This document shows, piece after piece, positions 18,018-59,678 of a DNA stretch of 64,000 nucleotides; position 1 is the stretch's first letter, and each line of letters starts with the position of its first letter. A program made the position numbers and the translations under genes. The notes below the pieces were generated by a model. That model did no database searches, was not told the origin of the DNA, and saw only the letters and a list, made by a program, of their open reading frames with translations. The stretch is from positions 1-64,000 of the IMG/VR virus record IMGVR_UViG_3300023175_000005; one strand, 5' to 3'.

Positions 18018-18383
18018 TCAATGATTTAATTTAATACTGCCAATAGAACCATCTGTCCAACTGTTGACAGTTGCTCTTACCCATACATAATTACCTGTAA
18101 AGTTTTTGATAAAACTACCATCGCTTTCTGTTGTGTCAGTAGCAGTGCTTTCGTGTTCTGTTGTATCTAATGTAAACCAGTCGGCTGTGCTTGGATCTAC
18201 AGCAAGTGTTGCTTGCATAACGATTTTGCCAATAAAACCTGTAACAGTATATTGCACACTATGGAAGCCATCACTACGTCCATAGTATCCGTCACCTCTG
18301 TATTTGTCTCCAGTGACAGTTTCAGTTGTGCTATCGCCCGGATGCACTTGATTTGATAATATTGTTTCACTATTACTTGGCAT
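18018..18383 (-). CDS. Putative virion structural protein
   Basis: Late TAAATA box; Thr/Gly-rich beta-type; paralogous to the C-terminus of the next gene. Confidence 0.65.
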   Translation of the reverse strand: MPSNSETILSNQVHPGDSTTETVTGDKYRGDGYYGRSDGFHSVQYTVTGFIGKIVMQATLAVDPSTADWFTLDTTEHESTATDTTESDGSFIKNFTGNYVWVRATVNSWTDGSIGSIKLNH

Positions 18384-18395
18384 AATGTATTTACC

Positions 18396-19190
18396 TTAAT
18401 TACGTACTAAAATTTTAGATATACTTGTTGTAGGATTGCTAGTTGTCTTAAATCTAAGATAACTAAACACACCATTAAAGTTTGTTGGTACAGGTTCTGT
18501 TTCGCTACCTGTAAGTGTTATTGTAGATACAGTTGTCCAATTATTTGTACCTGTAATTTGATTATCGAGTGTTGCTTGTACTTCTACATCACCAGCATAT
18601 CCGTTGTTATATATTGCTACAGTATGTAATGCTTCGTTGCCATTTAAACCAGGGTGTGCTGTAATCTTATCTGCATCGTCATTACCTGCAAACCATTCGT
18701 CTGTAACTTCTTGCCAGTTAGTTACAGTAATACTATCTTTAGGACCAGGCATAGCATTGCCATCTAAATAAATTGTTCCAGCAGCACCAAAGTCTCTATC
18801 ATTATAAGTTACTGTTCTAGTTTGATTAGACTCTAGAATCCAAACAGTGTATGACAAGTACTGTTGATTTACATTTAGTGTATCTGCATCAGTAAATGTA
18901 AAAGTAAAGGTTCCTTTTGTACTTGCTGTTGTGCCGTCGTCTGTAACTGTTGCTGCACGTTCTATAATTTTTGTATTTTCTCTATCAAAAACTGAAACAT
19001 ATACTGACTTTCCAAATACGTTTACTGGTTTTTGATCTGCATTAAGCATACGGAATTGAACTGTATTGTCAACTCCTCTATAAATTTTTACTGTTCGTTG
19101 ATACACTGGTCTATACTCCACGTTAAACCCGGCATCGTTTGAGATGACTAAAATTTGATCATTTACTAAATATCTAGGTATAAGTTGCAT
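18396..19190 (-). CDS. Putative virion structural protein
   Basis: TAAATA box plus AGGA RBS; beta-rich. Confidence 0.65.
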   Translation of the reverse strand: MQLIPRYLVNDQILVISNDAGFNVEYRPVYQRTVKIYRGVDNTVQFRMLNADQKPVNVFGKSVYVSVFDRENTKIIERAATVTDDGTTASTKGTFTFTFTDADTLNVNQQYLSYTVWILESNQTRTVTYNDRDFGAAGTIYLDGNAMPGPKDSITVTNWQEVTDEWFAGNDDADKITAHPGLNGNEALHTVAIYNNGYAGDVEVQATLDNQITGTNNWTTVSTITLTGSETEPVPTNFNGVFSYLRFKTTSNPTTSISKILVRN

Positions 19191-19227
19191 TACCAGGTCC
19201 TTTACTAAGTATATTTATCGAGAGCAC

Positions 19228-19596
19228 ATGTTATTAAAAGAGATAGAAAAACAATTTCCATATATTAGCGTTGTAGCATACGGCGGAAAAGAGTATGTTG
19301 GTATAATCACGAATCAAGATCAAACTGTTACTACAATGTTTGTATATACTGATTTAAAAACAGATAACGATAAAAAACTGTTACTTGATTTAGGAGAAAT
19401 TTGGTGGTGGGAGTCAAATAGAATGTTACCAATTACAACATTCTTAAGAGAAGAAATTTCACCGTTAAAATATTCAATGATGACAATGAATACAAAAGAT
19501 GTAAAAGTTAGTGTCGGACCTTGTGTTAATGTAAACAATTTGACAATTAAAAGAGTCAAAAGAAAAAGTGTTCAATTAATTAAAAAAGTTACTTAA
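19228..19596 (+). CDS. Conserved hypothetical protein (LGEIWWWESNR)
   Basis: 122-aa ORF fills the gap between flanking genes. Confidence 0.75.
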   Translation: MLLKEIEKQFPYISVVAYGGKEYVGIITNQDQTVTTMFVYTDLKTDNDKKLLLDLGEIWWWESNRMLPITTFLREEISPLKYSMMTMNTKDVKVSVGPCVNVNNLTIKRVKRKSVQLIKKVT

Positions 19597-31620: not shown

Positions 31621-32390
31621 TAATCTCTTCTTTCAATATCATCTTCAGTTAGTTCGTCTCCCATCCATACTTCGATAACTTTTGCAGTAATATCGCCTAC
31701 ATTTGTGGCTTTGTGCCAAGTGTTTACAGGGATATCAATACTGTCTCCTGAGTAGTATGTTTTGTTTTCTCTATCCCCATTTGGATATTCTAAACTCATC
31801 ATTATTGTACCTTGTACAATATGCCAATGCTCTGAGCGTACTAAGTGTCTTTGATCGCTAAGGCTTTTACCAACGTCAAACGCAAGTTCTTTTACTTGCC
31901 AGCCGCCGTTTTTATCTAAAATCTTATAAGTGCCCCATGCACGTTGAGTGATTGGTTTATCCCAATTACTAAGAATCCAACTACTTGAATTTTTCTTATT
32001 TGTGCCTCCTACGCCCCAAACAAATTCTACATCTTTTCGATCGCCATATGTTTTCCATTCTGGAGTATTTGTAGCACTGTCTCTATCGCCGCCGTTTGCA
32101 AATATAATTTTAGAATTTTCAGTTGTTGCCATAGTTTTAAAAATTGCACCACATGCACTGTTATCGCTGTCATCAAATGCAACAATTCTATCAACAAAAG
32201 AAAGTTCGTCTATAATTGCTGCACGTTCTTCAAACGGCATAAAAGGTCTTCCTTTTTTACGTGTTAACCATTCGTCACTATTAATTCCAACAAATAACTT
32301 ATCACCTAGTTCTTTTGCTGCTTTCATATAATCAATATGACCTGAATGTAGTGGATCAAAACCACCTGTTACTAATACAATTTTTTCCAT
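31620..32390 (-). CDS. HXGH cytidylyltransferase fused to an MPI type-II cupin
   Basis: TGGFDPLHSGH, FANGGDR, KNSSS; RAWG, LSDQRH..RSEHW. Confidence 0.88.
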   Translation of the reverse strand: MEKIVLVTGGFDPLHSGHIDYMKAAKELGDKLFVGINSDEWLTRKKGRPFMPFEERAAIIDELSFVDRIVAFDDSDNSACGAIFKTMATTENSKIIFANGGDRDSATNTPEWKTYGDRKDVEFVWGVGGTNKKNSSSWILSNWDKPITQRAWGTYKILDKNGGWQVKELAFDVGKSLSDQRHLVRSEHWHIVQGTIMMSLEYPNGDRENKTYYSGDSIDIPVNTWHKATNVGDITAKVIEVWMGDELTEDDIERRD

Positions 32391-32425
32391 ACTGTATTTA
32401 TATACGTATATAACTTAAAAAAAGT

Positions 32426-32995: not shown

Positions 32996-33006
32996 ACTAT
33001 ATTTCT

Positions 33007-33555
33007 TTAAACAAAACGTATTCGATATTTTCTACTTTTTTGTTGTGCAACAATTTCGTCTAAAATCTGTATGTTCTCTTGAGATTCTATATTACGTATG
33101 TCCATAATAATAAAACTGTTTTCATTTGTATGTTTGTTAACAATTTCCATGTATGTATTTGCAGGATAATGAAATCCACAACTTAAAAAACTATAAACAA
33201 GATCAAATGTTACATTTTCATCTATTTGAATATTGTTTGCATCTACAAAATTATATTGCATATTTTGACTATCGTAATAACGTTTTAAGTCTGTAATTTT
33301 ATTATAAAAAGACATGTTTTCAACAGACCCGTATCTAACTTGTCTAGTGCCATTGCTTTCAGAAAATTCACCATCTAGTAAATATAATTCACTTCCGTAT
33401 TTTTCTTGAAATAATTTTGATTCAGTAGCAAAGCCACATCCTATATCAAGGATACATTTAGGTTTAAATTTAATATAGGAATCAACTATATTAAAATTTA
33501 CAGTCTTTCCGTGAATGTAATCATCACGTGTCCAAAATTCTTGCCAAGTAATCAT
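33007..33555 (-). CDS. Class I SAM methyltransferase
   Basis: ILDIGCG, FDLVYS. Confidence 0.8.
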   Translation of the reverse strand: MITWQEFWTRDDYIHGKTVNFNIVDSYIKFKPKCILDIGCGFATESKLFQEKYGSELYLLDGEFSESNGTRQVRYGSVENMSFYNKITDLKRYYDSQNMQYNFVDANNIQIDENVTFDLVYSFLSCGFHYPANTYMEIVNKHTNENSFIIMDIRNIESQENIQILDEIVAQQKSRKYRIRFV

Positions 33556-33558
33556 ATT

Positions 33559-34317
33559 CTATTTACGCCTATTTTTACGTAAAAAATCATTTATTTGCTG
33601 ATGTGTCATGTCAAATTTTTCTTTAAATCTTTGAAAATATTCTTTTTTATTTGCTTTGAAATATTCTTTTTGTGTATGCTCGCCTCTACCTTCTCTAAAT
33701 GTGCTATTTCTATACCAATCTATACTTAATAATGGCGTAGTAAATTCATCCCAACCTGCATTTAAATTATACATACGCATATCTTCAGTTGCACCTTGAC
33801 CGTGATGATATGTAACATCATACCAGCCGTGTTTTTTTCTTTTTAATTCACTAATATATTTTGTATTCCATATAGTAAATATAGGCTGTGCAAACATAGG
33901 ATTTTTAATAAAATTATCAACGCCTATTTGTTCAGGTATAGCAACATCTATCCAACCATCAACATTTTCTATTTTAGAATATATTGCACTCCATTTTTCT
34001 TTCTTTAGAGATTTTGTAGTCTTTACAATAGTTTTTTTATAGTTTTGTTTTAATAATGTTGCACTAGTGGTAATAGTAACAAAGAAAGATTTTCTTTGAT
34101 TTATTTCCCTATCAAAAATTACTCTATAAGCGCCGCTTACTTTCCTATTTGTTGGTAATGGAATTCTAGTTTTAGGATGCATGGGTTCTTTGTCAGAACC
34201 GTTATCTAGTATATAGATATCTTCTTCTAACATTGATCTACAAAGCATACGATATATTTTATCTGTATGCTCTGGCATATTATAGTTTATGATATAGGTA
34301 TTAAAAGAGTCCGACAT
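33559..34317 (-). CDS. GT2-like protein
   Basis: IINYN, ILDNGSD. Confidence 0.6.
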   Translation of the reverse strand: MSDSFNTYIINYNMPEHTDKIYRMLCRSMLEEDIYILDNGSDKEPMHPKTRIPLPTNRKVSGAYRVIFDREINQRKSFFVTITTSATLLKQNYKKTIVKTTKSLKKEKWSAIYSKIENVDGWIDVAIPEQIGVDNFIKNPMFAQPIFTIWNTKYISELKRKKHGWYDVTYHHGQGATEDMRMYNLNAGWDEFTTPLLSIDWYRNSTFREGRGEHTQKEYFKANKKEYFQRFKEKFDMTHQQINDFLRKNRRK

Positions 34318-36366: not shown

Positions 36367-36439
36367 GAGAATCCTTATTCAATTAAGTACGTATATTTAG
36401 TAAATAAATAACTGCGTATTTAAAAGTTCGGAGCATAAC

Positions 36440-40956: not shown

Positions 40957-41017
40957 AGTAATGCCTCCTTATATATGCCTATGTTCTATGTGCCTTTATG
41001 TGTAGCACATTATCTTT

Positions 41018-41046: not shown

Positions 41047-41065
41047 CTGTTTTTTTTATTTTTTT

Positions 41066-41200: not shown

Positions 41201-41203
41201 ATC

Positions 41204-42760
41204 TTATACTCCTGCTAACGCTTTAATTGCGTCTGTTTCAGGATGCATACTATTGTTTAATTCTTCAGCCTTACGTTGCGCAACCATAGCCTCTACTTTT
41301 TTAATCATTTTAGCGGCAGGTTTGACATATTCGTCGCCGTAATCTTTTTGCACCGCAGTTAATACTGCTGTCTCGCCTTTTGGAAATTTGCCTGTTTCTC
41401 TGTCAAAATAACTTAGAATAAATTCTCCAATTGGTGTTTTTGGTTTTTGTTGCATAGGCTCTTGATCGGGCGGAGCAATAGTCATTGTTGGCATATCATC
41501 TGATTCTGGAACGGCACTTGCCATTTCTTTACAATCTGAACATCTACCATGCCCGTCATAAACATCCATAATCGGAGCGCCGCAACAATTGCTTACCATT
41601 CCTTCTTCGTTTTCATCGCCTGGTGAATATGCTTCTTTTTCATCATCATCATTGCCTTCAGCAAATTGTCCCATTAGGGCATTAATTGCTGCTTCTAACA
41701 TATCATTGATTGATTCTTGTTTTGCTTTTTCCTTACGTTCTTCAGCCTCTACACTAGCACTTTCTTCGCCTAGTAAATCATCTGGACCTAATTCTTCTGG
41801 CTTCATTGATTCGCCTACTAAGTTATAGATATAAGGAAATACATCTTTTAGTTCTTCGTTGAACTGTTTGATTGTAAGTTGATCAATCCAGCTATCTGCA
41901 ATATCTTCCGGAACTTCTTTTGCTTCTGTTTCTACAAAATTTTCTTTAGCCTGTAAATAGTGTGATTCTTTTTGTAAATTTTGTATTGTTTTTCTAACTT
42001 CGTTTACTCTTTCACTTACTACATCCATGTAGCCTGCTAAACTTTCAGCCATTACACTTGAACGATTCATATACTTTTTAAATGAATTAAGTTTACTTAA
42101 TTCTTCTGACAAACCGGAGATATATTTGCCAAACGAATCATACGCATTACCACCTTCACTAACATGTCTTGCCATTGCTCTTGCACCGCTTAGATGTATA
42201 AAAGGATATTTAAATCTTTCTCCATCTGCACTTTCAATGTAGATTGCGCCAATCTTTTTTGTACGATTTTCACCTTCTTCAATTGGTGCTGTATGTTTAA
42301 TAGCAAGTCTTGCATTACCTATTTTTTGATAACTTGTTTTGTTAGTTCCATACATTCTTGATTCTGACATGGGATTCTCCGATTTGCGATTTGTGGCTAA
42401 AAAGTCATAATCTCTTTTGTTTAGATTTGATTTATTAATGTCTCTTACTGAAAACTTCATGAGCCTTTTTTTAGCAAAAGTACGTAATTCTTTAAGAAAA
42501 TTATACCATTCTGTTTGTACATTTTGCTCTTCGTTTGATACAATATCTCTGCCTACAATTACTACCAGTCCTTCGTCAGTATCTAAATTGATACTTACTT
42601 TGCCTAAATCACGTCCTTCATTATAATAACCAAAATCAAAAAAACGTGCTTCTGTAGGTTCGTTGGTTATTTCACCGTTTTCGTTGCCAATTGTTACGCT
42701 AGGAAAACGACCTCTAATTTTATTAAATAGGTCAGATGCTATATTGTCAAAGTTCTGCAT
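41204..42760 (-). CDS. Putative virion/internal head protein
   Basis: TAAATA-N5-ATG; Glu-rich; adjacent to terminase. Confidence 0.65.
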   Translation of the reverse strand: MQNFDNIASDLFNKIRGRFPSVTIGNENGEITNEPTEARFFDFGYYNEGRDLGKVSINLDTDEGLVVIVGRDIVSNEEQNVQTEWYNFLKELRTFAKKRLMKFSVRDINKSNLNKRDYDFLATNRKSENPMSESRMYGTNKTSYQKIGNARLAIKHTAPIEEGENRTKKIGAIYIESADGERFKYPFIHLSGARAMARHVSEGGNAYDSFGKYISGLSEELSKLNSFKKYMNRSSVMAESLAGYMDVVSERVNEVRKTIQNLQKESHYLQAKENFVETEAKEVPEDIADSWIDQLTIKQFNEELKDVFPYIYNLVGESMKPEELGPDDLLGEESASVEAEERKEKAKQESINDMLEAAINALMGQFAEGNDDDEKEAYSPGDENEEGMVSNCCGAPIMDVYDGHGRCSDCKEMASAVPESDDMPTMTIAPPDQEPMQQKPKTPIGEFILSYFDRETGKFPKGETAVLTAVQKDYGDEYVKPAAKMIKKVEAMVAQRKAEELNNSMHPETDAIKALAGV

Positions 42761-42771
42761 AGTATTATTTA

Positions 42772-44358
42772 TCAATAGTTGCTGCTAATAAAGATAGGCA
42801 TTGGGGGTTCGTAATCTTCTTCTCCAGCCCCGTCCATTTGTGAAAAAGAATTATAAATGTTTACATCCCAATCTTTCATTACATTTATCATACGTAATGC
42901 AAGAAGCATACTGCTGACTAAGTCATCTGTTTGACCCGGCTTTGCTTGATAACTGCTTCCTGTTGCAACATAGTTTTTTAGTTCTGATATAAATGGTTTA
43001 CTACGAACAATAAGTTTATTATTTTCTATCATAGTTTTCATTCTAGCACATGCAGTAACTTTTGCACTGTGCGTTGTATTAAATCCTTTACGGAATTTAC
43101 GAACATGTCCTTTTCTAATAGGTTCACTAATAAACAACCCAGGTATCTGCTCTTCACCTAGATCAGCAATAACAAGTAGTGCTGCTTCACCTAATCCGTT
43201 ATTTTCAACACTCCAATATATACCGTTATCAGTTTTTCTTTCTGTTTCTAAGTACGTGCAAATATCTCGAAGCACTCTAATTTGTCCAGGAATACCTGTT
43301 GTATTATGTTGCCATTCTCCTACTTGTTCGTATGTAGGTAATTCTACGATCTGTATTGCTGCATTATCACCTCCTGTGCCCATTGAAGGATCTAATGCAA
43401 TAGCATAATTATACTTGGCATTAGGTTTTTTATACCAACGAGTTTGCCCCATATTAATTGTAGGCGAAACGCCTTCCATGGTTGCAAGATGTAAACTTGC
43501 TATAAGTGTTTCGTCAAATACTAAGAATTCACAACCATATTCTCTACGGAAGCGCTCTTCTCCAATACGTCCAATTTCGTCTTCTTTCCATTTTTCATCA
43601 CGGTCAGGATGCTCGTCCCAGTTTGCAAGAAAACTATGAAATCCGTTTCTTCCTGTTTCGCTTTCGTTTCCGAACTCGTCAAATTTATCTTCTGCTAGTT
43701 TCCAAATATTAGCAAACGTATCTTCGTCTGAGTTTGGCGTGCTTGTTATAATAGCACGACCACCTGTTGCTAGTGTAGGTGATATTGAAGTCCAAAATTC
43801 ATCTGCAATGTTAGGTTGCACAAATGCAAACTCGTCACAATATAGTAACGAAATAGACATACCGCGTCCAGTAGTGCCTGTTGTTGTTTGGCTTACTATA
43901 CGTGATCCATTTTCAAATTCTATTGAGCCCTTATTATAGGATACAACACCTGCTCTAATATGATCAGGACATAATTCATATACATAACGAATACGCTGCA
44001 TAATTTCTTGTGCACCTGTATATTTGTGTGCAGCAATTAGAATAGTTTGATCAGGATTAAACATTGCATACCAAGCAAGATAGATAGCAGCACAAGTAGT
44101 TTTTCCTGTTTGTCTAGGCATCATGTTTATATTAAATCTATAACTGTGATAGGAATGCATTAAGCGCAATTGATACTCATAGGGTTCAAATAACAATTTG
44201 CCTTTTACAGGATGTTGAATGTAAGCAAATTGTCTTGCAAAGTACAGATATCCTTCATCAGGATCCATGCAATTCATGAGATCCTGTATTTGGTTTTCGT
44301 TAAATGTTTCTTGCTTATTAGCCTTTTTGACTAATACTCCGTCAAGTGATTTACTCAT
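42772..44358 (-). CDS. Terminase large subunit (gp17-like)
   Basis: PRQTGKT, YCDEFAF, ITSTPN, REYGCEF, LDPS, DDLVSS. Confidence 0.96.
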   Translation of the reverse strand: MSKSLDGVLVKKANKQETFNENQIQDLMNCMDPDEGYLYFARQFAYIQHPVKGKLLFEPYEYQLRLMHSYHSYRFNINMMPRQTGKTTCAAIYLAWYAMFNPDQTILIAAHKYTGAQEIMQRIRYVYELCPDHIRAGVVSYNKGSIEFENGSRIVSQTTTGTTGRGMSISLLYCDEFAFVQPNIADEFWTSISPTLATGGRAIITSTPNSDEDTFANIWKLAEDKFDEFGNESETGRNGFHSFLANWDEHPDRDEKWKEDEIGRIGEERFRREYGCEFLVFDETLIASLHLATMEGVSPTINMGQTRWYKKPNAKYNYAIALDPSMGTGGDNAAIQIVELPTYEQVGEWQHNTTGIPGQIRVLRDICTYLETERKTDNGIYWSVENNGLGEAALLVIADLGEEQIPGLFISEPIRKGHVRKFRKGFNTTHSAKVTACARMKTMIENNKLIVRSKPFISELKNYVATGSSYQAKPGQTDDLVSSMLLALRMINVMKDWDVNIYNSFSQMDGAGEEDYEPPMPIFISSNY

Positions 44359-44373
44359 ACAATATTTAGTCAC

Positions 44374-44398
44374 AAAAATAGCGCCCTAAGGCGCTATT
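44374..44398 (-). terminator. Intrinsic terminator
   Basis: AATAGCGCC-TTAG-GGCGCTATT-TTT. Confidence 0.75.
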
Positions 44399-44412
44399 GA
44401 TGTCTGGGGGGT

Positions 44413-45522: not shown

Positions 45523-45523
45523 A

Positions 45524-46069
45524 TTAACCTCCTATAACACTTTCTGTGTTTTGTGGCTCTTCTTTAACTGGTTCTGCTTTGTGTGCATTACCTTCTTGTT
45601 TTTCTTTACGAGCAGTTTCTAATTCTTTTAAAAGATCCATTATTCTTTTTTCGCCTACTTGATCTTGTGCAGATTCGCCTTCTAATTCTTCTGTAGTTAG
45701 CATAGGCTCATATGTTTTTTCTTCTACTTGTTCTTGATATGCTTCTTGTGCTTCTCCTGGACTGCGTACAATTACGTATCCTGGCTGACATGCACAGCAT
45801 TGTTCAATATATTCCTGTAATATTAAAGTAGTAGTTGGGTAGCCTAATTCACACTCCCAATAAGTTACTTCCATATTTTCTAGTTGTGGGAAATCTAATG
45901 GACGTTCTTGAATAGGTGTTTTTTTACCTGAACTGCAATTTGCTACTTCAAATTTTCCTAAACACGCTTTCATTTGAGATTCAAAATCGTCAGCCAAATC
46001 ACCTGCTACTCCTATTTTAAAAGGATAGGTTTTCTTGGCTTCTGTTAAATATTCTTTAAATTGTTTCAT
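45524..46069 (-). CDS. Putative internal head protein
   Basis: N-terminus [10 protein letters not shown] resembles the T4 capsid-targeting sequence. Confidence 0.6.
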
Positions 46070-46092
46070 AGTAATGGATCCTGTTACTAGTA

Positions 46093-46590
46093 TTATTTAT
46101 CCTTATCCATGCCTTTTAACTTTTCTAGTAGGCTATTTCTGTCAGTTACAACATAGCCGTCACCTTCTGTAAATCCATGGTCGATAGTATCGCTATCTAG
46201 TTTTTGTTTCTTAAGTTGCAATTCTATCATTTTTAATTTTTTATCAATTTTAGCAGTCTTTGCATCTAGGTTTGTTTTAAGCATTGTGCCTGCAACTTCA
46301 AATACTCTACCAGAATAACGTGACTCAACATTCATACCTAAATCCATTAGATCTTCATATGCTTGCATTGCTTTATCAGCAACCTCATTAAGTTCAGTAT
46401 CTGCCATTTCCCCTAGTCCTTTTACAGCGGGTAATGCACTTGCTATCTTATCAAATTCTTCTATGTCTCGAAAAGTTTGCTCTTGTTGTACAAGTGCTTG
46501 CTTATCTTCTTTTCTTTGTTGACGTTCTTGCTCTTTGATTATTTCTTTTGAATCTGGCAAGTTTAAAAGATCTTCTAGTTTTTTACTCAT
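46093..46590 (-). CDS. Probable terminase small subunit (gp16-like)
   Basis: Helical; RVFEVAGTML; C-terminal VTDRNSLL; late box. Confidence 0.7.
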   Translation of the reverse strand: MSKKLEDLLNLPDSKEIIKEQERQQRKEDKQALVQQEQTFRDIEEFDKIASALPAVKGLGEMADTELNEVADKAMQAYEDLMDLGMNVESRYSGRVFEVAGTMLKTNLDAKTAKIDKKLKMIELQLKKQKLDSDTIDHGFTEGDGYVVTDRNSLLEKLKGMDKDK

Positions 46591-46597
46591 ATAATAT

Positions 46598-47032
46598 TTA
46601 GCGCCCGCCTGTGTGGAACATATCTTTTTCAGTTATGATTCTAAAAGCAATACCTTTAGATTTACACCAGTTTCTAGCCGCTTCCCATTTTACTTGATTC
46701 AATGCCCAATGCAATTGATTTCTTCTGTTACGTCCTGTCTTTTCTTTTAATGTATGCATTTCAGGCTTTATTTCTATTACTTCAGTTTTTTGTTTACCAT
46801 TTTGATCTACATAGTGTATAAAAAAGTCAGGTACATAAATTGTTTGTTTGCCAGTAAAAGGATTTCTATAAGGAATCTTAATCGCTTCACTGGCCCACTT
46901 GTATATACTTGGATTCTCGTCACAAAACTTCATAAAGTGAAATTCCCAACTGCTACGATATGTAGGCATACTACCGCCTATATATTTGTCAGGGTTTTTT
47001 GGTCTGAATTTACCCTGAGCATACTTGGTCAT
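46598..47032 (-). CDS. Head completion nuclease (gp4-like, TnsA fold)
   Basis: PKNPDKYIG, YRSSWE, WASE, YVPDF, EIKP, ITEKD. Confidence 0.92.
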   Translation of the reverse strand: MTKYAQGKFRPKNPDKYIGGSMPTYRSSWEFHFMKFCDENPSIYKWASEAIKIPYRNPFTGKQTIYVPDFFIHYVDQNGKQKTEVIEIKPEMHTLKEKTGRNRRNQLHWALNQVKWEAARNWCKSKGIAFRIITEKDMFHTGGR

Positions 47033-50788: not shown

Positions 50789-51999
50789 TATGCAGATTCC
50801 TGTCTAGGAACAACATAAGTTTTTCCGTTTACATTTACTAATTTTTCATTTTTGTTATCGTAACTGCCCTTAAAGGGTCTTGAGTTAGCAGGTAAATTAT
50901 CTGTTAAATCGGTTCTTTGTTGTGCAGATCTTTGTTCTGCTCCTGCTGCTTTTATATCTGCCCAATTAATACCACCTTGACCTTGCTGATTTATTCCTCT
51001 AGATGTAAGTCCTTGATTTACAATAGGTTGTAAACCTAATCTATCTAGATTTAATTTATCTCCTAAAAATTTAGAAGCAGATGTTTTTATAAAATTTTGT
51101 GCAAATGCTTCTATAGAATTAGTTCTTCCTTTTTGCGGAGACACACTTCCAAACGGTGTAGTTGTAACTCTACTGGTGCCAAAACTACTGCCTCCTTCTT
51201 GTATAGGACTTGGTCTAGTATCATAGTGTCTTTGATCTCCAAAAGATGTAGGTGCTACACCTTCTAATAGTTCTCCTCTTTCGTAATGAACTGTTTCGTA
51301 TGCTACTGTCATTGAATTAGTTGAAAATTCACTTCCTTCTGATTGCACATTATCGTGTTGGAAATCTTCTACTAATGGATTAATTAGTGTAAAGCATGTA
51401 TAGTGTGTTTTTTTATTCAAAGGATGCAATTGGAAAATTTGAATAGAATCAAAAAATTGATACATTTTATTTGGTTTATCTAAACCATATCTGTAATTAA
51501 AGTTTTGAAAATATGTATTATTAGATCCAAATGCACTTCTTCTATATCTTTCGTCTGGAGCAATATCTGGTGCTGCTGAAGCACTTTGTTTTTGATGATC
51601 GCCGTCTGCATAATAATATCTAAAATATGCTTCCCACAACAATGTTGTTAGCCCTGCATTATCATCATGAAATTCAATTCTTACTGGCTGATAATCTATT
51701 CTTGTTTGTAAAAGTTTTTTTCTATTATACTGATTTAAAACTTCTACTTGTGGTCTATATTTTGGCAGTTCTGCACTTTTTGCTAAAATATGAATGTCTT
51801 CTTGTGTAAAATTATCAATGAGCGTGTCTGGTCTAACATCTGGGTTTATATTCAAAACTACATGATAGAGAAACTTGTGCTTAGGAGCAAGACGCATATT
51901 GTTAGAGCGGAATACTCTAGATGCATGATCATAATCGCCTAAATTACCTTTAGGACCATTATAGCTTTTAATATTATCAAAAAATCCTGTGAACGCCAT
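50788..51999 (-). CDS. Tail tube-related / baseplate tube initiator (gp19/gp54-like)
   Basis: AELPKY, NQYNRK, IEFHDD; next to the tube gene. Confidence 0.7.
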   Translation of the reverse strand: MAFTGFFDNIKSYNGPKGNLGDYDHASRVFRSNNMRLAPKHKFLYHVVLNINPDVRPDTLIDNFTQEDIHILAKSAELPKYRPQVEVLNQYNRKKLLQTRIDYQPVRIEFHDDNAGLTTLLWEAYFRYYYADGDHQKQSASAAPDIAPDERYRRSAFGSNNTYFQNFNYRYGLDKPNKMYQFFDSIQIFQLHPLNKKTHYTCFTLINPLVEDFQHDNVQSEGSEFSTNSMTVAYETVHYERGELLEGVAPTSFGDQRHYDTRPSPIQEGGSSFGTSRVTTTPFGSVSPQKGRTNSIEAFAQNFIKTSASKFLGDKLNLDRLGLQPIVNQGLTSRGINQQGQGGINWADIKAAGAEQRSAQQRTDLTDNLPANSRPFKGSYDNKNEKLVNVNGKTYVVPRQESA

Positions 52000-52035
52000 A
52001 CTGTATTTATCGTTTATGTAAAGTGTGTGGATAAT

Positions 52036-52084: not shown

Positions 52085-52702
52085 TTAACCAGTTGTACCA
52101 GTTCCAATTGTTCTAGGAACTGCTGCTCCTACTCCTTCACCATTTGGTGTTTGTACAGCATTATCATACTGTATTGTAACTGATGTTTGTACTGGTTCAC
52201 TGTTTGCATATGCTAAGGAATTATAGTTGACTTCTGTTAAGTAGCAACCATAAATTTCCCAAGTTTCTAACACACCTGCTTCTGCTGCTCCATTACCGCC
52301 ATCTAAAATTTCAATGTTAGTTTGGAACTTATAATCAATACCAGATGCAGCACTTGCTTGATTAATAAAGTCAAATTGTTTCTGAAGTTGTTCGCCAACT
52401 AGTTTTTGCACACTGTTGTTTACATCTTCACGTAATGTAATTGTAATTGGGTTCCATGTGTGTTTACCTGCCAAATGTACAGTTGAATTGTATACCGGAA
52501 TTGGCATGTTTTCGAACGTCAAGTTCGGTCTTGCAGCATCGATAACTTGTTTGGTTAATTCAGTAGTTGATGCAGTAACGCCAAAGTTAATAAAGTTTAC
52601 TCTAAAACGGTATTGTAGTTTTGGCATTAACAAGCCTTCAGATGTTGCACTCTGGTCGCTTGCTAATGGAACACTTAATTTTGTTAATGATGAGATTGCC
52701 AT
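52085..52702 (-). CDS. Tail tube protein (gp19-like)
   Basis: PKLQYRFRV, LAGKHTWNPITITLRED, WEIYGC, IQYDN; follows the sheath gene. Confidence 0.88.
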   Translation of the reverse strand: MAISSLTKLSVPLASDQSATSEGLLMPKLQYRFRVNFINFGVTASTTELTKQVIDAARPNLTFENMPIPVYNSTVHLAGKHTWNPITITLREDVNNSVQKLVGEQLQKQFDFINQASAASGIDYKFQTNIEILDGGNGAAEAGVLETWEIYGCYLTEVNYNSLAYANSEPVQTSVTIQYDNAVQTPNGEGVGAAVPRTIGTGTTG

Positions 52703-52735
52703 TTAATATTTCTCCTATTCACAAGTATTTATCAG

Positions 52736-55700: not shown

Positions 55701-56101
55701 GCACCATTAGCAGGCTTGCCTGCTGTTTCTGTTGCACTTGCTGTGATTGCATCCATGTCTACTGGTGCTCTAACAACATACGCTCTATTTGCTACGCCTA
55801 AGAAACTGTATGCTGCTTGTAAACCATATTCGTTTTGCTCGCCCCCATGAATCGAAGCACCATTGTTATCTGTGTAGAACAATGGATCGCCGAATGTTTC
55901 TGATAGTTCACGCTGTGAACTCATCAAATATACTTTGCCAGCATTTGCTGCTGTTGTACCTGGGGCAATACCTGTGCCTGCAGGATTTGATTTATCTTGT
56001 TTTGTTGCCACAAAAATTAGTGGTGTTGTACCTGGTTCAGCAGGAGTGTAAAAACTCTCGTCTATAACGCTGACCTGTACGCCTGGTGATGTTAAAGCCA
56101 T
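52772..56101 (-). CDS. Tail sheath protein (gp18-like) with large insertions
   Basis: LTSPGVQVSVIDES, PWFAPAGTRRG, RVNVARL, FEPND, CDETNN. Confidence 0.96.
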   Translation of the reverse strand: MALTSPGVQVSVIDESFYTPAEPGTTPLIFVATKQDKSNPAGTGIAPGTTAANAGKVYLMSSQRELSETFGDPLFYTDNNGASIHGGEQNEYGLQAAYSFLGVANRAYVVRAPVDMDAITASATETAGKPANGAWWFDTNDSFYGIFEWNGAAATTTGGQTFTNRVPTVITDTTKVVDYAGADYTPKTSVGAVGDYALVAVTTTNKLWYKNADGTWVEVGGAAWRKSWPAVTGTAANPTLTIGQELIIRVEEANSTSTEHTITLTGTTVTSLVGQINVDAGLASAGVTAKNNNGRLSLYNAGGTTGGQGDLIDVFGDAALLSALGITAGEYYSPELTIAAHTSVPEYKTNDTEPRPTGSIWVKTTTPNLGANWSVKQYSSATDAWTTVNAPIYANNHTAIYEMDTSGGGAGIAEGSIYVQSNTSEEAYDNLANFKIYRKSGSGAVTITSTKITASTFPAGTYSFTMSESLSGQNSMDSAKTISFTATGATADADTLAGDINSAGFTNVSANVDSQNRVVISHALGGEIRIVDTDGIVDNAYTVFDSTDPTTTTNFYYTPGTDSSTSPKQYIVTWWKTLSYTASEGAPTSTPADGALWYSSVVDEVDMMIHNGTSWVGYHNFDHTGGGLVGASSTNDPAGPIVAASAPTEQSDGSALVVGDLWISTADLENYPQVYRWTAAGVWALLDSTDQTTENGVLFADARYNTAGANSDEAGDIADLLVSNYLDPDAPDPALYPKGMLLWNTRRSGFNVKEFKRDHIDINAENGRNGDESMAGYYANRWVTKSANNEDGSGSFGRKAQRKIVVQALQAEMNSNQDIRDDESRIFNLISTPGYPELIGEMVTLNNDRGLTAFVVGDTPMRLTPDSTSLTNWANNIAGAVEDNDDGAVTSDEYLGMYYPAGFTSDNAGNNIVVPASHMALRTIALNDQVAFPWFAPAGTRRGSVTNATASGYIDSEGEFTSVALNEGQRDTLYSKNINPISFINGAGLVIFGQKTRAANASSLDRVNVARLVVYLRSQLKTLAKPFVFEPNDKITRDSIKGQVESLLIELTSLRAIFDYLVVCDETNNTPTRIDKNELYVDVAIEPVKSVEFIYIPLRLKNTGEIASL

Positions 56102-56250
56102 TTTTTTAATCTCCTTTGGGATTTCACTATTGCTATATTATATTTACCAGTATGCATAGAAATATACCTAAAATACATGGTAAAACACGCATTTTATACT
56201 TGACAAATATAATATTTTTTGTTATTATCAAGGATAACTTAGGAGGCATC

Positions 56251-56526: not shown

Positions 56527-57003
56527 TTGTTTAAGCCAAACATTGTTTGTACCAACATCGTAATCTACTATCAGTTCGTTTACTGCTTGATAAACACCTG
56601 CATAATCAATATCATGACCAGTTAACCAGCCACCTTTTTTAACCTTAGGTGTATATGCTCTTATGTCTCTGCACACCCAAGGATAACTGTGATCTGCATC
56701 TATAAAAACTAAATCTTGAGAATTATCAGGAATATTTTTTGCACAATAATCGCTTAATCCTGCAAACGGTTTTAGCCTATCTCCGTACTTTTCTTGGATT
56801 TGTTTATTATAAAACCCTCTAATACTTTTATCTATTGCGTAAATCACAAGATCGGGATTATTATCTAATAAATGAAATGTTGTTCTGCCATCTCTTACAC
56901 CTACTTCGGTCATTGTTTTAATATTGTGTTTTTTTATCCACCAATTTAAAAAATGTTTTCTATTAGGTTTTCCTGTGTATTCAATTGTCTGATCTAAATT
57001 CAT
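56521..57003 (-). CDS. Methyltransf_24-like SAM methyltransferase
   Basis: EVGVRDG, DLVFIDADHSY, GGWLTGHD. Confidence 0.85.
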   Translation of the reverse strand: MNLDQTIEYTGKPNRKHFLNWWIKKHNIKTMTEVGVRDGRTTFHLLDNNPDLVIYAIDKSIRGFYNKQIQEKYGDRLKPFAGLSDYCAKNIPDNSQDLVFIDADHSYPWVCRDIRAYTPKVKKGGWLTGHDIDYAGVYQAVNELIVDYDVGTNNVWLKQL

Positions 57004-57692
57004 TTCATACCTATCCGCATAAATCTTGTATATTTTGTTAAAGATAATTCTCCTTCATAAAAAACGTGCATAGGTGTTTGTTCAGCAAATGTTTGTAAAT
57101 TAGAAACACAATTTATATGCTGTTCGTGTTCGTAATAGTTATTATTTTGTAATGCAACTATTGTGCCTGATGGAATGTCGTCATACCATTGCGTAAAATC
57201 TTCTATATGTTCACAACTTGTATTGATAATTGTATTAGGCATTTCAGTTAGTTCTAAACTTGTACCGTTTGCCCTAAAAGTTTCATGTGTAGTAGGATAT
57301 GTCATTTTTCTAATATCTAATGTGCTTGCTTTAAATTGCCAGCCATCCATTACATATGGTCGATTAATATTATCAGCAACATCTGCACAACTTGGATCTA
57401 TATCAAAGCTTCTAATCTTTTCAAACTTATCAGGAATGTATTCAAACATCATACCTGCAAGGGTGCCAAACCAGCCTGCACATATAAAAACTGTACCCAT
57501 ATCATTGGGTAAGTTTTCTACCATCCATTTTTTACTTTTCAATTGTCCTAAACTATACGCATCTACCATTGCATATTCAACTTCAGGAAATTTATGTAAA
57601 GTCCTTTTAAGTTGAGACACAGTTACGTTTTCAGGGTATAAAAATTCTAAACCGTTTAGGAATTGAATTACACTGCTGCTAAATTGTTGCAT
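57000..57692 (-). CDS. Class I methyltransferase-like protein
   Basis: GQLKSK, CAGWFG, SFDID, INTSCEH. Confidence 0.75.
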   Translation of the reverse strand: MQQFSSSVIQFLNGLEFLYPENVTVSQLKRTLHKFPEVEYAMVDAYSLGQLKSKKWMVENLPNDMGTVFICAGWFGTLAGMMFEYIPDKFEKIRSFDIDPSCADVADNINRPYVMDGWQFKASTLDIRKMTYPTTHETFRANGTSLELTEMPNTIINTSCEHIEDFTQWYDDIPSGTIVALQNNNYYEHEQHINCVSNLQTFAEQTPMHVFYEGELSLTKYTRFMRIGMK

Positions 57693-57717
57693 AGTGTATT
57701 TATATTAAATGCGTAGT

Positions 57718-58479
57718 TTATCCTATAACAAAACTATAACCTGTGCCGCCTGCAACATTTAATGCTGCTTCTGCGTCAAGTTTTTCCATTTCTGCTTGCG
57801 CTTCTGCTTTTAAACTTGCACCGTTTAAACTAGTACCACCTTGTGGTCCTGCAATTGTTGCAAACTTTTCACGTGCTTCGCCTAACATATACTTACATGC
57901 TGCTAATGTATAATCTTTGATCCATTGCTTTGAAAGATAGTCTTCTAGCAATTGCGAGTCAGGACGGAAATTGTAGCAATACAACAAAATTTCTTCATCT
58001 GCTCTTGGACGTTGTAGTATTGTTAACTTTTTTGTAGGACTATTCCATGTAAATTCTATAAAGGAACCAAACATTCTACCTACCAATTCTTGATAACTTG
58101 CAAACATGTAGTAAGTTGCGAGGCCGCCTACAGCAGAACTTGCTAACAAATATGTATTAGTATATGCAAGATTAAATGGCTCGTATAGTGTTCCGCCATC
58201 ACCTCCAGCAGATCTACTACCTACACTTCTTCTAAAACACTGTCTTACTTCTTGTATTTCATTTGGAAGAATATAATCATTTTGATCTTCAACTAAAGTT
58301 AATGTGACATAACTTTCTTCTACACTATGATCAACACGCTGTCTATACCTACTAAGTGCCTTTGTTAAAGCAGTTTCATAGTGTATTGGATCAAGTTCAA
58401 CATCGACCATACCGCCACCTAAAAAGGCTTTTACATAGTCGAAAATTTCTTGTTTTTGTTCAATGTAGTTTGCTGCCAT
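57718..58479 (-). CDS. Neck protein (gp13-like)
   Basis: LGGGMVDVEL, WIKDYTLA, GGTSLNG; GGAG RBS gives ATG 58479. Confidence 0.85.
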   Translation of the reverse strand: MAANYIEQKQEIFDYVKAFLGGGMVDVELDPIHYETALTKALSRYRQRVDHSVEESYVTLTLVEDQNDYILPNEIQEVRQCFRRSVGSRSAGGDGGTLYEPFNLAYTNTYLLASSAVGGLATYYMFASYQELVGRMFGSFIEFTWNSPTKKLTILQRPRADEEILLYCYNFRPDSQLLEDYLSKQWIKDYTLAACKYMLGEAREKFATIAGPQGGTSLNGASLKAEAQAEMEKLDAEAALNVAGGTGYSFVIG

Positions 58480-58523
58480 AAAAGTTCTCCGTATTGTATT
58501 TATTCGTTGCGATAAATATATGT

Positions 58524-59678
58524 ATGCCACGCTTAAGCTTATATAGACCAAATAAAACAAATGATTATACATTTTTAGATGATGTAATTAGAGAACAATT
58601 TTACATCGGTGGCACCGACGTGAATGTACACAAATATCTAGGACCAAGAAATCCTACAGAAGAAGAAGCAACAGCAGAACAGCCACGTTATGATGCAGTT
58701 AAAGAGACTAACATTCAAGATATGCTGTTCTTGGAAAACAGAGATAGAAAATACGATCAAGATATCTACACAATACGTGGCATTTATAATGTAATAGATA
58801 ACGATTTTAATCTAAGTCAGTTTGGATTGTTTTTAAGCAATGATACATTGTTTATGACTATACACATAAATGAAAGTGTAAAAACACTTGGTAGAAAAAT
58901 TATGGCAGGTGATGTATTTGAACTGCCTCACTTAAAAGACGAATATGCTGCAAATGACTATAGTGTTGCACTAAAACGTTTTTATGTAGTTGATGAAATT
59001 ACTCGTGCAGCAGAAGGTTTTTCACAGACTTGGTATCCTCATTTATATAGAGTTAAACTAAAACAAATATTTGATTCACAAGAGTTTAAAGATATACTGG
59101 ATTTACCTGCAGGTGATGATGCTGATAATACTTTACGTGATGTACTAAGCACATTTGAAACTGAAATGAATATTAATAATGCTATTGTACAACAAGCAGA
59201 AGCAAATGCAAAAGCCGCAGGATATGAAACAAGTCACTTTTTTACAGTAGCAGTAGATGATGACGGCGTACCTACATTGAGGACAGCAGATTCAACAGAA
59301 ATAGATGCAAGTGGCAGTGAACTTTCAGATTCTATCTTAGATACTCCTATACGTGATGGTTATGACGGCTATCTAATAGGAGACGGACTTGCACCAAATG
59401 GTTCGCCTTTTGGTAGTGGGTTATCATTTCCTGACGCAAGTGCATCAGGAGATTACTTTTTGAGAACAGACTTTTTTCCAAATAGACTATTTAGATATGA
59501 TGGGAGAAGATGGGTGAAAGTTGAAGATAACGTAAGACAAACACTAACTAACACATCAACAAGAGCGCATCAGAAAGGTACGTTCATTAATAACACAAAC
59601 ACAAGCACTATTGGCGGTGAAGTTGTTGAAGAAAGACAATCACTATCAAAAGCATTAAAGATAAAGACGGATAACTGA
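58524..59678 (+). CDS. Neck/head-closure protein (gp14-like)
   Basis: FLENRDRKY, LSQFGLF, GDVFELPH; TAAATA-N5-ATG. Confidence 0.75.
   Translation: MPRLSLYRPNKTNDYTFLDDVIREQFYIGGTDVNVHKYLGPRNPTEEEATAEQPRYDAVKETNIQDMLFLENRDRKYDQDIYTIRGIYNVIDNDFNLSQFGLFLSNDTLFMTIHINESVKTLGRKIMAGDVFELPHLKDEYAANDYSVALKRFYVVDEITRAAEGFSQTWYPHLYRVKLKQIFDSQEFKDILDLPAGDDADNTLRDVLSTFETEMNINNAIVQQAEANAKAAGYETSHFFTVAVDDDGVPTLRTADSTEIDASGSELSDSILDTPIRDGYDGYLIGDGLAPNGSPFGSGLSFPDASASGDYFLRTDFFPNRLFRYDGRRWVKVEDNVRQTLTNTSTRAHQKGTFINNTNTSTIGGEVVEERQSLSKALKIKTDN

What the first reader, a model, noticed from the sequence alone, without database searches (positions are those of the whole stretch)
18383..58524. Late genes look systematically leaderless: TAAATA-N4/5-ATG
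Seen: TAAATA ends 4-5 nt before the ATG, with no room for an SD, at starts 18383, 32390, 42760, 44358, 46590, 51999, 57692 (-) and 58524 (+); variants occur at 32995 and 11059. The sheath, tube and gp13 genes instead have TAAATA plus a leader (AGGAG or GGAG). Established: the T4 late promoter is TATAAATA with initiation a few nt downstream. Inference: transcripts start at or next to AUG, giving two expression tiers and immunity to anti-SD silencing.
Basis: partly seen in the sequence, partly recalled or inferred. Interest (0 to 1): 0.6.

Follow-up and report, generated by a model that had tools for sequence, protein, structure and literature searches.

The report
Late promoters fused to start codons
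In this uncultured salt-marsh jumbo phage and its relatives, a fixed subset of late genes (the large terminase, a minor tail-tube protein, several enzymes) has a T4-type late promoter box 4-5 bases before the ATG and no ribosome-binding site. Their mRNAs therefore most likely start at the AUG (leaderless), but no transcript 5' end has been mapped.

Summary
All eight listed sites are TAAATA-N4/5-ATG, and there is a ninth at 33555. Across the 256.6-kb phage record, 16 of 19 such sites open ORFs of at least 60 aa, against 10 of 69 at other spacings (Fisher p = 2e-8).

TAAATA behaves as a T4-type late promoter:
- It is twofold depleted overall but ninefold enriched upstream of genes.
- It has no -35 element.
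- A gp55-like sigma gene lies at about 101 kb.

Its distance to the start codon is bimodal: 4-5 nt with no SD, or about 15-45 nt with AGGAG in between.

In 57 non-identical IMG/VR relatives the class is gene-specific:
- **Leaderless-type:** TerL 57/57, g51999 36/36, g32390 17/17, g42760 50/57 (the other 7 at N7).
- **Leadered:** tube 0/36 and sheath 0/18.

The base before the ATG is a pyrimidine in 193/194 sites. Leadered promoters, and T4's own, carry a purine at +6 after the box; the A of the ATG sits there at N5 and one base earlier at N4.

T4, PA5oct, GAP32, Phosso and a Vibrio phage show no enrichment.

No TSS data exist, and the metatranscriptome contigs were uninformative. "Systematically" is an overstatement, since about half of the TAAATA-driven genes keep leaders. 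Verdict: probable leaderless late mRNAs, a new variant of a known kind.

The parts
44356..44368 (-). TAAATA (44368-44363) + TTGT + ATG (44358-44356) of the large terminase gene (42772-44358). ATG-adjacent late promoter, no SD.
   Evidence: The motif lies at N4/5 in 57/57 relatives with 0 SD. Codon periodicity begins right after the ATG.
44374..44398 (-). Intrinsic terminator (9-bp stem, 4-nt loop, T-run) ending about 5 nt before the TerL promoter box.
   Evidence: Sequence. The consensus fold over 39 distinct relatives shows compensatory changes in 4 of 9 pairs.
42758..42771 (-). TAAATA + ATACT + ATG of a 518-aa virion structural protein gene (41204-42760). The motif directly follows the TerL stop codon TGA.
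   Evidence: The motif is at N4/5 in 50/57 relatives and at N7 in the other 7, with 0 SD. M1 and residues 7-19 are conserved.
51997..52009 (-). TAAATA + CAGT + ATG of a 403-aa tube-fold (Hcp/gp19-like) paralogue gene (50788-51999). A T-run or terminator lies upstream.
   Evidence: The motif is at N4/5 in 36/36 relatives. The fold matches T4 neck-tail and baseplate tube proteins, Foldseek E 1e-6.
32388..32400 (-). TATAAATA + CAGT + ATG of a 256-aa nucleotidyltransferase-like gene (31620-32390).
   Evidence: The motif is at N4/5 in 17/17 relatives. The GGFDPLHSGH motif sits at residues 9-18, so the protein must begin at this ATG.
33553..33565 (-). TAAATA + GAAT + ATG of a 182-aa gene (33007-33555). 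The upstream stop codon TAG overlaps the motif.
18381..18393 (-). TAAATA + CATT + ATG of a 121-aa gene (18018-18383).
46588..46600 (-). TAAATA + TTAT + ATG of a 165-aa gene (46093-46590). The TAA of the motif is the stop codon of the head-closure gene upstream.
   Evidence: Only this phage and its 96% relative have this form. In 45/46 other orthologues TAAATA sits further upstream, mostly 23-29 nt.
57690..57702 (-). TATAAATA + CACT + ATG of a 230-aa gene of unknown function (57000-57692).
58513..58526 (+). GATAAATA + TATGT + ATG of a 384-aa virion structural protein gene (58524-59678).
   Evidence: Five relatives share the N5 form.
58476..58502 (-). Leadered late promoter, back to back with the previous part: TAAATA (58502-58497) + a 17-nt leader with GGAG + ATG at 58478.
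52700..52731 (-). Leadered late promoter of the tail tube gene: GATAAATA + a 23-nt leader with AGGAG + ATG at 52702.
   Evidence: All 36 relatives have TAAATA + leader + AGGAG, and none is ATG-adjacent. After the box, +5 is Y in 23/27 and +6 is R in 23/27.
56099..56146 (-). Leadered late promoter of the tail sheath gene: TAAATA + a 39-nt leader with AGGAG + ATG at 56101.
   Evidence: In relatives 16/18 have an upstream motif and 18/18 have an SD.
46067..46099 (-). Leadered late promoter: GATAAATA + a 24-nt leader with AGGA + ATG at 46069.
   Evidence: All 48 relatives are leadered.

Best explanation
TAAATA (extended consensus GATAAATA) is the -10-only late promoter of this phage, read by host RNA polymerase carrying the phage's gp55-like sigma factor. 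As in T4, transcription starts at a purine 5-6 nt after the box.

In one class of late genes the leader has been removed, so that this purine is the A of the ATG. The mRNA then begins with AUG, has no Shine-Dalgarno sequence, and must be translated by the 5'-AUG (leaderless) pathway. In the window these genes are the large terminase, the 518-aa virion protein after it, a tube-fold paralogue, a nucleotidyltransferase and others. Outside it they include a baseplate wedge subunit and a radical-SAM protein.

A second class (sheath, tube and others) keeps a 15-45 nt leader with AGGAG.

Which class a gene belongs to is conserved across a diverse uncultured clade, which points to selection, most simply for setting protein yield.

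- **Shown:** motif, spacing, statistics, conservation, absence of SD and of alternative starts, presence of the sigma gene.
- **Inferred:** the position of the transcript 5' end, the translation mode and the purpose.
For: 1. Spacing-specific link to real gene starts: 16/19 sites against 10/69 in the genome, and 195/210 against 50/317 in 57 relatives.
2. TAAATA behaves like a promoter. It is depleted twofold genome-wide (217 observed, 393-456 expected). It occurs in 36/266 upstream windows against 3.9 expected. It has no -35 element. It sits upstream of SD-bearing leaders at variable distance.
3. A gp55-like sigma gene lies at G000 100858-101706(-), matching phrog_12791 at 1.9e-78 and phrog_234 at 2.5e-21, next to a gp47-like gene.
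4. Geometry. T4's TATAAATA spans -13 to -6. Leadered promoters here have R at +6 in 22/26 sites, and a conserved Y5-R6 step in three of four orthologue families. T4's own sites have R at +6 in 12/14. At N5 sites the A of the ATG is +6; at N4 it is +5.
5. The base before the ATG is Y in 16/16 sites here and 193/194 in relatives, against 43% at SD-led starts. This is the usual Y(-1)R(+1) initiation rule.
6. Gene-specific conservation despite only 40-80% protein identity: TerL 57/57, g51999 36/36, g32390 17/17, g42760 50/57 (+7 at N7); tube 0/36, sheath 0/18.
7. A covarying terminator ends about 5 nt before the TerL box, so a transcript that starts after it can carry at most about 15 nt before the AUG.
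8. The ATG is the start codon. There are no usable upstream or SD-led downstream starts. M1 is invariant and the N-termini are conserved. Codon periodicity starts at codon 2. Catalytic motifs sit at residues 9-18 and 22-29.
9. Only ATG follows the motif: 16 ORF-opening ATG against 0-1 for GTG, TTG or CTG.
10. A -10 box a few bp before an ORF is the accepted signature of leaderless genes in Deinococcus-Thermus and in Thermus phages.
Against: - No 5' end has been mapped. The only RNA data are assembled metatranscriptome contigs, which cannot show starts. Some of them run across the sites: X3 41924-42787 and X4 44066-44801.
- N4 is the commoner spacing in this genome (12 of 16 sites). With strict T4 geometry it puts +1 on the T of the ATG, so a one-base shift in start-site choice must be assumed.
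- Five of the nine window sites have the upstream gene's stop codon within about 25 nt, so re-initiation on polycistronic RNA could also serve them.
- gp33 and gp45 homologues were not found, though the record is only 72% complete and the T4 queries are very distant.
- The host is unknown, so its capacity for leaderless translation is unknown.
Confidence: 0.65

Rival explanations
1. The ATG-adjacent TAAATA works at the RNA level on longer, polycistronic or read-through transcripts. It would act either as an AU-rich, SD-independent ribosome-loading element or simply as the spacer for termination-reinitiation coupling. Under this reading the likeness to the promoter box is secondary.
For: - The upstream stop codon lies within about 0-25 nt at 18383, 33555, 42760, 46590 and 57692.
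- Metatranscriptome contigs bridge 42760 (X3) and 44358 (X4).
- AU-rich tracts are known S1-dependent enhancers (own knowledge).
Against: - The element is the exact promoter hexamer. One-mismatch AU-rich variants are not enriched at N4/5.
- TerL and g51999 are preceded by a terminator and a 55-85 nt gap, so coupling cannot apply there.
- A strict pyrimidine at -1 (193/194) has no known role in translation but is the rule for transcription initiation.
- The same box sits 15-45 nt upstream of SD-led genes, where it cannot be a ribosome site.
Confidence: 0.15
2. The boxes are late promoters, but initiation is not at the A. Transcripts would start 1-3 nt upstream, giving very short leaders. Or they would start at the G of the ATG or beyond, so that promoter-driven RNA does not encode the first gene, which would then be made only from read-through RNA.
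For: - With T4 geometry N4 puts +1 on the T and the next purine is the G.
- Seven g42760 orthologues have N7, which predicts a 2-3 nt leader.
- Start-site choice by RNAP is flexible by about one base (own knowledge).
Against: - Both N4 and N5 are used for the same gene in different relatives while the ATG stays adjacent.
- A Y directly before the A is nearly invariant.
- One leadered family (g46069) has its Y-R step at +4/+5, so +5 starts are plausible.
- Skipping the first gene would leave TerL, which sits behind a terminator, without an efficient mRNA.
Confidence: 0.15
3. The pattern is chance, or a by-product of an AT-rich genome and mis-called starts.
For: The genome is 35.5% GC and AT-rich hexamers are common. 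My gene calls are home-made.
Against: - The spacing statistics do not depend on gene calls: p = 2e-8 in the genome and 5e-76 in relatives.
- TAAATA is under-represented overall.
- The arrangement is conserved gene by gene in 57 relatives.
- There is no enrichment in five cultured relatives of similar composition.
Confidence: 0.02

Closest known systems
Bacteriophage T4 late transcription (gp55 sigma, gp33, gp45 clamp; TATAAATA at -13 to -6)
   Same: - The promoter is a -10-only A/T box with the TAAATA core and no -35 element.
- A gp55-like sigma gene is present, beside a gp47-like gene as in T4.
- The box lies upstream of sheath, tube, baseplate and terminase genes.
- A purine sits 6 nt after the box.
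   Different: - T4 shows no enrichment of TAAATA-N4/5-ATG (10 sites against 12 in the control).
- To my knowledge, which I did not test here, T4 late mRNAs have SD-bearing leaders.
- The consensus here is GATAAATA rather than TATAAATA.
- gp33 and gp45 were not detected.
Thermus phages phiYS40 and Lalka27a (mostly leaderless transcripts)
   Same: These are phage genes whose mapped transcripts begin with the A or G of the initiator codon. The late promoters have a phage-specific -10 element.
   Different: - Their Thermus host itself uses leaderless mRNAs widely.
- There most genes are leaderless, whereas here a conserved subset coexists with a majority of SD-led genes.
- The promoter type and the phage lineage differ.
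- There the 5' ends were measured; here they were not.
-10 motif adjacent to ORFs in Deinococcus-Thermus (TANNNT a few bp before the start codon)
   Same: The diagnostic architecture is the same: a -10 element at a fixed short distance from the ORF, no RBS, and a strict spacing requirement.
   Different: That case concerns host sigma-A promoters of cellular genes, not a phage late sigma.
Lambda cI mRNA from PRM (classic leaderless phage mRNA; own knowledge)
   Same: The transcript starts at the A of the AUG and is translated without an SD.
   Different: It is a single regulatory gene of a temperate phage transcribed by sigma-70. It is not a class of late structural and enzyme genes.
Closest cultured relatives: Pseudomonas phage PA5oct (TerL 53% identity), Sinorhizobium phage Phosso, Rak2-like GAP32, Vibrio phage 2.275.O
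   Same: These are jumbo myoviruses with T4-type terminase, sheath and gp15. ATAAATA boxes lie upstream of their late genes.
   Different: - Most of their late genes carry leaders with SD: TerL in GAP32 and 2.275.O, the tube gene in PA5oct, and the gene after TerL in Phosso and GAP32.
- Exceptions: the gene after TerL in 2.275.O has the box at N14 without an SD, and Phosso's TerL has no obvious SD.
- None shows enrichment of the ATG-adjacent pattern: 20 against 30, 4 against 2, 9 against 18 and 6 against 5.
- The PA5oct paper reports only sigma-70-like promoters and does not mention leaderless genes.

Membership tests
T4-type (gp55-dependent) late promoter system | A phage-encoded gp55-family sigma factor. 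| tested here: met
   A 282-aa ORF at G000 100858-101706(-) matches T4 gp55 at E 8e-7, phrog_12791 'sigma factor for late transcription' at 1.9e-78 and phrog_234 at 2.5e-21.
T4-type (gp55-dependent) late promoter system | An 8-bp TATAAATA-like box at the -10 position, with no -35 element. | tested here: met
   The TAAATA core is invariant and the extended consensus is GATAAATA. The best TTGACA match upstream averages 2.9/6 against a background of 3.1. The first position differs from T4 (G, not T).
T4-type (gp55-dependent) late promoter system | The box sits in front of virion and late genes and is counter-selected elsewhere. | tested here: met
   It lies upstream of sheath, tube, TerL, baseplate wedge and virion proteins. 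Genome-wide there are 217 copies against 393-456 expected.
T4-type (gp55-dependent) late promoter system | The gp33 co-activator and the gp45 sliding clamp. | tested here: inconclusive
   There was no hit with T4 gp33, T4 gp45 or PF09116. The record is estimated to be 72% complete and the queries are very distant.
T4-type (gp55-dependent) late promoter system | Transcription depends on the sigma factor and occurs late in infection. | not testable with these tools
   There is no cultured host and no time-resolved RNA data.
Leaderless mRNA genes | The primary transcript 5' end lies at the A of the AUG, or within about 5 nt of it. | not testable with these tools
   Only assembled metatranscriptome contigs were available. 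They cannot show starts.
Leaderless mRNA genes | A -10 element at a fixed short distance from the start codon. | tested here: met
   The spacing is 4-5 nt (7 nt in seven orthologues) and never 8-12.
Leaderless mRNA genes | No Shine-Dalgarno sequence. | tested here: met
   There is no room for one. TerL, g42760 and g32390 orthologues show 0 SD-like matches. The 11 flagged at g51999 are an AGGA overlapping the box 11-12 nt upstream.
Leaderless mRNA genes | The start codon is AUG and the protein really begins there. | tested here: met
   Only ATG follows the motif productively. There are no alternative starts. M1 and the N-termini are conserved, and codon periodicity starts at codon 2. N-terminal proteomics was not available.

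The most novel reading that the evidence does not exclude
The phage deliberately splits its late proteome into two translation classes, SD-dependent and 5'-AUG-dependent. It would use the split as a control layer: for example, a phage-induced change in the host's initiation machinery late in infection would shift output between abundant shell proteins and low-copy enzymes or minor virion parts. Alternatively, the split would keep terminase and modification enzymes translatable when SD-dependent initiation is attacked by host defence. The leadered-to-leaderless switch seen at g46590 would then be adaptive tuning still under way.
Probability: 0.12. Interest if true: 0.8.

Novelty: new variant of a known kind. 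Interest (0 to 1): 0.55.

Why it matters
T4-type late transcription is a textbook system, and its mRNAs are thought of as SD-led. If the inference holds, a large and environmentally common clade of jumbo phages has fused that promoter to the start codon of a conserved set of genes. More than 599 IMG/VR contigs match its terminase, and the phage is present in salt-marsh metatranscriptomes.

That would be a natural, gene-by-gene comparison of leaderless and SD-led expression under one sigma factor. It would apparently be in a host whose phage genes otherwise use SD, rather than in the Thermus/Deinococcus setting where leaderless genes are the norm.

There are two practical consequences. Gene callers that demand an RBS will mis-place these starts: the longest-ORF rule picks GTG at 44373, TTG at 42775 and TTG at 58494 instead of the ATGs. 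The motif also gives a simple rule for correct start annotation and promoter prediction in this clade.

It also yields a compact, testable part, GATAAATA-N4/5-ATG plus one sigma gene, for studying start-site choice and leaderless translation.

Tried and rejected
- **RNA evidence.** The one run search found 21 RNA-labelled salt-marsh or aquatic metatranscriptome runs holding the stretch. All are kept as contigs. Laying four of them showed the region in RNA libraries at low depth, but contig ends are not transcript ends. The ends were inconsistent: 42758 in X4, 42737 in X1, and a contig running through to 42787 in X3. I draw no TSS conclusion from this.
- **IMG/VR contig ends as surrogate 5' ends.** None of 86 mappable ends lay just downstream of a TAAATA box. 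Uninformative.
- **gp33, gp45, PF09116.** Nothing found. This is not evidence of absence.
- **Phage-encoded IF3 (PF00707) or ribosomal S21 (PF01165)** as possible helpers of a translation switch: none found.
- **One-mismatch motif variants.** There is no enrichment at N4/5, so I did not enlarge the class. 11059 is rejected as unsupported and 32995 is kept as possible.
- **Identity of g42760.** No Pfam family, no PDB sequence relative and no Foldseek match at E <= 0.001. It is not a portal by any test, and orthologue lengths vary from 468 to 912 aa.
- **DNA search of the phage collection** with 15 kb of the window: no match.
- **The simple terminator scan** did not list the TerL-upstream hairpin. 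The alignment fold did recover it.
- **The phiYS40 primary paper** is not held. I cite it through.

Full report
**What the window is.** The window is the first 64 kb of a 256,558-bp IMG/VR virus record. The record is 35.5% GC, linear, and estimated 72% complete. The window carries T4-type genes: large terminase, a 1109-aa sheath, tube, gp15-like sheath stabiliser, head-closure protein, UvsX, ssDNA-binding protein, helicases and primase. The closest cultured phages by terminase are Pseudomonas jumbo phage PA5oct (53% identity), Sinorhizobium phage Phosso, and the Rak2-like group. No DNA-level match exists in the phage collection.

- Every listed start has TAAATA ending 4 nt before an ATG (5 nt at 42760 and 58524), with no room for an SD. 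A ninth window site, 33555, was missed.
- In the whole record TAAATA-N4-ATG occurs 13 times, and 12 open an ORF of at least 60 aa. N5 occurs 6 times, and 4 do.
- The fourteen other spacings from 0 to 15 give 69 sites, of which 10 open an ORF. Fisher p = 2.3e-8.
- The reversed-pattern control gives 7 sites against 19.
- Only ATG is used: 16 productive ATG sites against 0-1 for GTG, TTG or CTG.
- One-mismatch versions of the hexamer are not enriched at these spacings. The 11059 'variant' is therefore unsupported. 32995 (GAAATA) is plausible only because 3 of 7 orthologues have the exact box.

**TAAATA is a promoter-like element, not just AT-rich sequence.**
- It is half as frequent as Markov models predict: 217 against 393-456 in the record, and 62 against 100 +/- 10 in the window.
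- It nevertheless occurs in 36 of 266 forty-nucleotide windows upstream of gene starts, against 3.9 expected.
- Its distance to the start codon is bimodal. It is either 4-5 nt, or about 15-45 nt with AGGAG/GGAG between box and ATG.
- There is no -35 element: the best TTGACA match averages 2.9/6 against a background of 3.1.
- A separate class of TTGACA-N17-TATAAT early promoters exists.
- The record encodes a gp55-family late sigma factor at 100858-101706(-). It matches T4 gp55 at E 8e-7, phrog_12791 at 1.9e-78 and phrog_234 at 2.5e-21. It lies next to a gp47/SbcD-like gene, as in T4.
- gp33 and gp45 were not found with T4 queries, which is inconclusive in a 72%-complete record.

**Geometry.**
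- In T4 the TATAAATA box spans -13 to -6, so +1 is the sixth base after it.
- Of the 14 exact T4 boxes listed on the forward strand, 12 have a purine at that sixth base. These include P23, where it is G preceded by T.
- In this phage's 26 leadered sites the sixth base is a purine in 22.
- In orthologue families of leadered genes a pyrimidine-purine step is conserved at +5/+6. For tube it is 23/27 and 23/27. For g46590 relatives it is 33/33 and 31/33. For sheath it is 3/3. In one family, g46069, the step is at +4/+5.
- In the ATG-adjacent class the A of the ATG is that base: +6 at N5 and +5 at N4.
- The base before the A is a pyrimidine in 16/16 sites here and 193/194 sites in relatives. At SD-led starts it is a pyrimidine 43% of the time, giving p about 2e-6 for the 16.
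- So the start codon sits on or next to the predicted initiating nucleotide and obeys the Y(-1)R(+1) rule of transcription initiation.

**Comparative evidence.**
- A terminase-based scan of IMG/VR found at least 599 related contigs. The best 80 have TerL 80-100% identical but other proteins only 40-60% identical.
- In 57 non-identical loci, TAA[AG]TA-N4-ATG occurs 79 times (76 opening ORFs) and N5 131 times (119 opening). At all other spacings 50 of 317 open ORFs. Fisher p = 5e-76, with the caveat that the sequences are related.
- The class is gene-specific. TerL is ATG-adjacent in 57/57, the tube-fold paralogue g51999 in 36/36, and the nucleotidyltransferase g32390 in 17/17. The virion protein g42760 is ATG-adjacent in 50/57, and the remaining 7 are at N7.
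- By contrast tube is 0/36, sheath 0/18 and g46069 0/48. All of these keep the box plus a leader with an SD. No gene has the box 8-12 nt from its start.
- g46590 is ATG-adjacent only in this phage and its 96% relative. In the other 45 orthologues TAAATA sits further upstream, mostly 23-29 nt, with a conserved leader. That is a recent switch of class.
- In most relatives TerL's box is preceded by a hairpin and T-run ending about 5 nt before it. Four of the nine stem pairs show compensatory changes. A transcript that begins after that terminator can carry at most about 15 nt before the AUG.

**The ATGs are the real starts.**
- There are no in-frame upstream ATGs and no nearby SD-led downstream starts.
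- M1 is invariant, and residues 7-19 of g42760 are conserved.
- Third-codon-position variability starts at codon 2 in TerL, g42760 and g32390.
- g32390 has its GGFDPLHSGH nucleotidyltransferase motif at residues 9-18. The radical-SAM protein at 225394 has its cysteine motif at residues 22-29.

**Specificity to the clade.**
- T4 (10 sites against 12 in the control), PA5oct (20 against 30), GAP32 (9 against 18), Phosso (4 against 2) and Vibrio phage 2.275.O (6 against 5) show no excess.
- Two 236-kb clade members do: 20 against 8, and 25 against 6.
- In the cultured relatives most orthologous late genes sit behind ATAAATA plus an SD-bearing leader, or behind an SD alone. Examples are TerL in GAP32 and 2.275.O, and the gene after TerL in Phosso and GAP32. 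In 2.275.O the gene after TerL has the box at N14 without an SD.

**Which genes are in the class.**
- The ATG-adjacent class holds TerL, a possible small terminase (a weak match, E 4e-4), a nucleotidyltransferase, a methyltransferase-like protein and a radical-SAM protein. It also holds a baseplate wedge subunit and several virion proteins of unknown role.
- It also holds a tube-fold paralogue. Its best structural matches are T4 neck-tail and baseplate tube proteins. Core pLDDT is 70-94, but the whole model averages 57, so only the core is reliable.
- The leadered class includes sheath and tube.
- This fits a low-yield against high-yield split, but it is an inference. No stoichiometry or expression data exist.

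**What is missing.**
- No transcript 5' end has been mapped.
- Salt-marsh metatranscriptomes contain the region, but only as contigs at low depth. Some contigs bridge the sites, DNA carry-over cannot be excluded, and contig ends are not RNA ends.
- IMG/VR contig ends do not coincide with predicted starts either.
- I found no IF3 or S21 gene that might suggest a phage-driven change in translation.

**Comparison with what is known.**
- A -10 box a few bp before an ORF is the recognised signature of leaderless genes in Deinococcus-Thermus.
- Thermus phages phiYS40 and Lalka27a have mapped leaderless transcripts.
- Full-text searches for 'leaderless' together with late promoters, T4-like phages or jumbo phages returned nothing comparable. 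phiKZ early transcripts and AR9 transcripts are explicitly not leaderless. The PA5oct omics paper does not mention the arrangement.

**Verdict.**
- I rate this a new variant of a known kind: a gp55-type late promoter fused to the start codon of a conserved subset of late genes.
- I put 0.65 on transcripts truly starting at the A of the AUG.
- I put about 0.15 on an RNA-level or coupling role.
- I put about 0.15 on a start offset by a few bases.

Noticed in passing
window 58476-58526: Two late promoter boxes sit back to back, 10 bp apart, and fire in opposite directions. One (minus strand) is leadered: TAAATA-N17 with GGAG, ATG at 58478. The other (plus strand) is ATG-adjacent: N5, ATG at 58524. 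The longest-ORF starts for these two genes (58572 and TTG 58494) are therefore probably wrong.
   Followed up: partly
window 46588-46600 and orthologues in L007-L084: g46590 is ATG-adjacent only in this phage and its 96% relative. Most other orthologues carry a strongly conserved leader, TAAATA-ATAGTAGCATATAATGGA-N6-7-ATG, which contains a TATAAT-like hexamer and an in-frame ATG. Its role is unknown.
   Followed up: partly
window 6514-6690: There are two adjacent tRNA genes, Leu(taa) and Arg(tct), in the plus-strand block at 1-12 kb. That block has higher GC (41-45%) and small ORFs, and is probably an early region.
   Followed up: no
window 14868-16328, 31620-37414: A cluster of sugar- or nucleotide-modifying genes lies here: Nol-like carbamoyltransferase, nucleotidyltransferase, sulfotransferase-like, methyltransferase-like and nucleotide-sugar epimerase. 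Several sit behind late promoter boxes. The cluster may serve DNA or virion glycan modification.
   Followed up: no
window 47032-48591: A subtilase (Peptidase_S8, 4e-32) is encoded inside the tail/neck module.
   Followed up: no
window 41204-42760 and orthologues: The virion protein after TerL has a conserved N-terminal region of about 330 aa and a conserved C-terminal region of about 75 aa. Between them is a highly variable insert, so orthologues range from 468 to 912 aa. No fold match was found.
   Followed up: partly
window 56200-56228 (+), 41018-41046 (-); G000 209001, 197601, 101706: These are near-consensus TTGACA-N17-TATAAT-type promoters in front of non-structural genes such as the ssDNA-binding protein and the gp55-like sigma. 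They form a second, host-sigma-type promoter class. Some contain TAAATA by chance in the spacer.
   Followed up: no
window 41001-47000: The stretch is present at 95-100% identity in many independent salt-marsh metatranscriptome runs from 2017-2019. The phage is therefore common, and probably active, in that habitat. The host is unknown.
   Followed up: partly
L090 2245 (Vibrio phage 2.275.O): The orthologue of g42760 in this cultured Vibrio phage has GATAAATA 14 nt before its ATG and no SD. This may be an intermediate, short-leader state.
   Followed up: no
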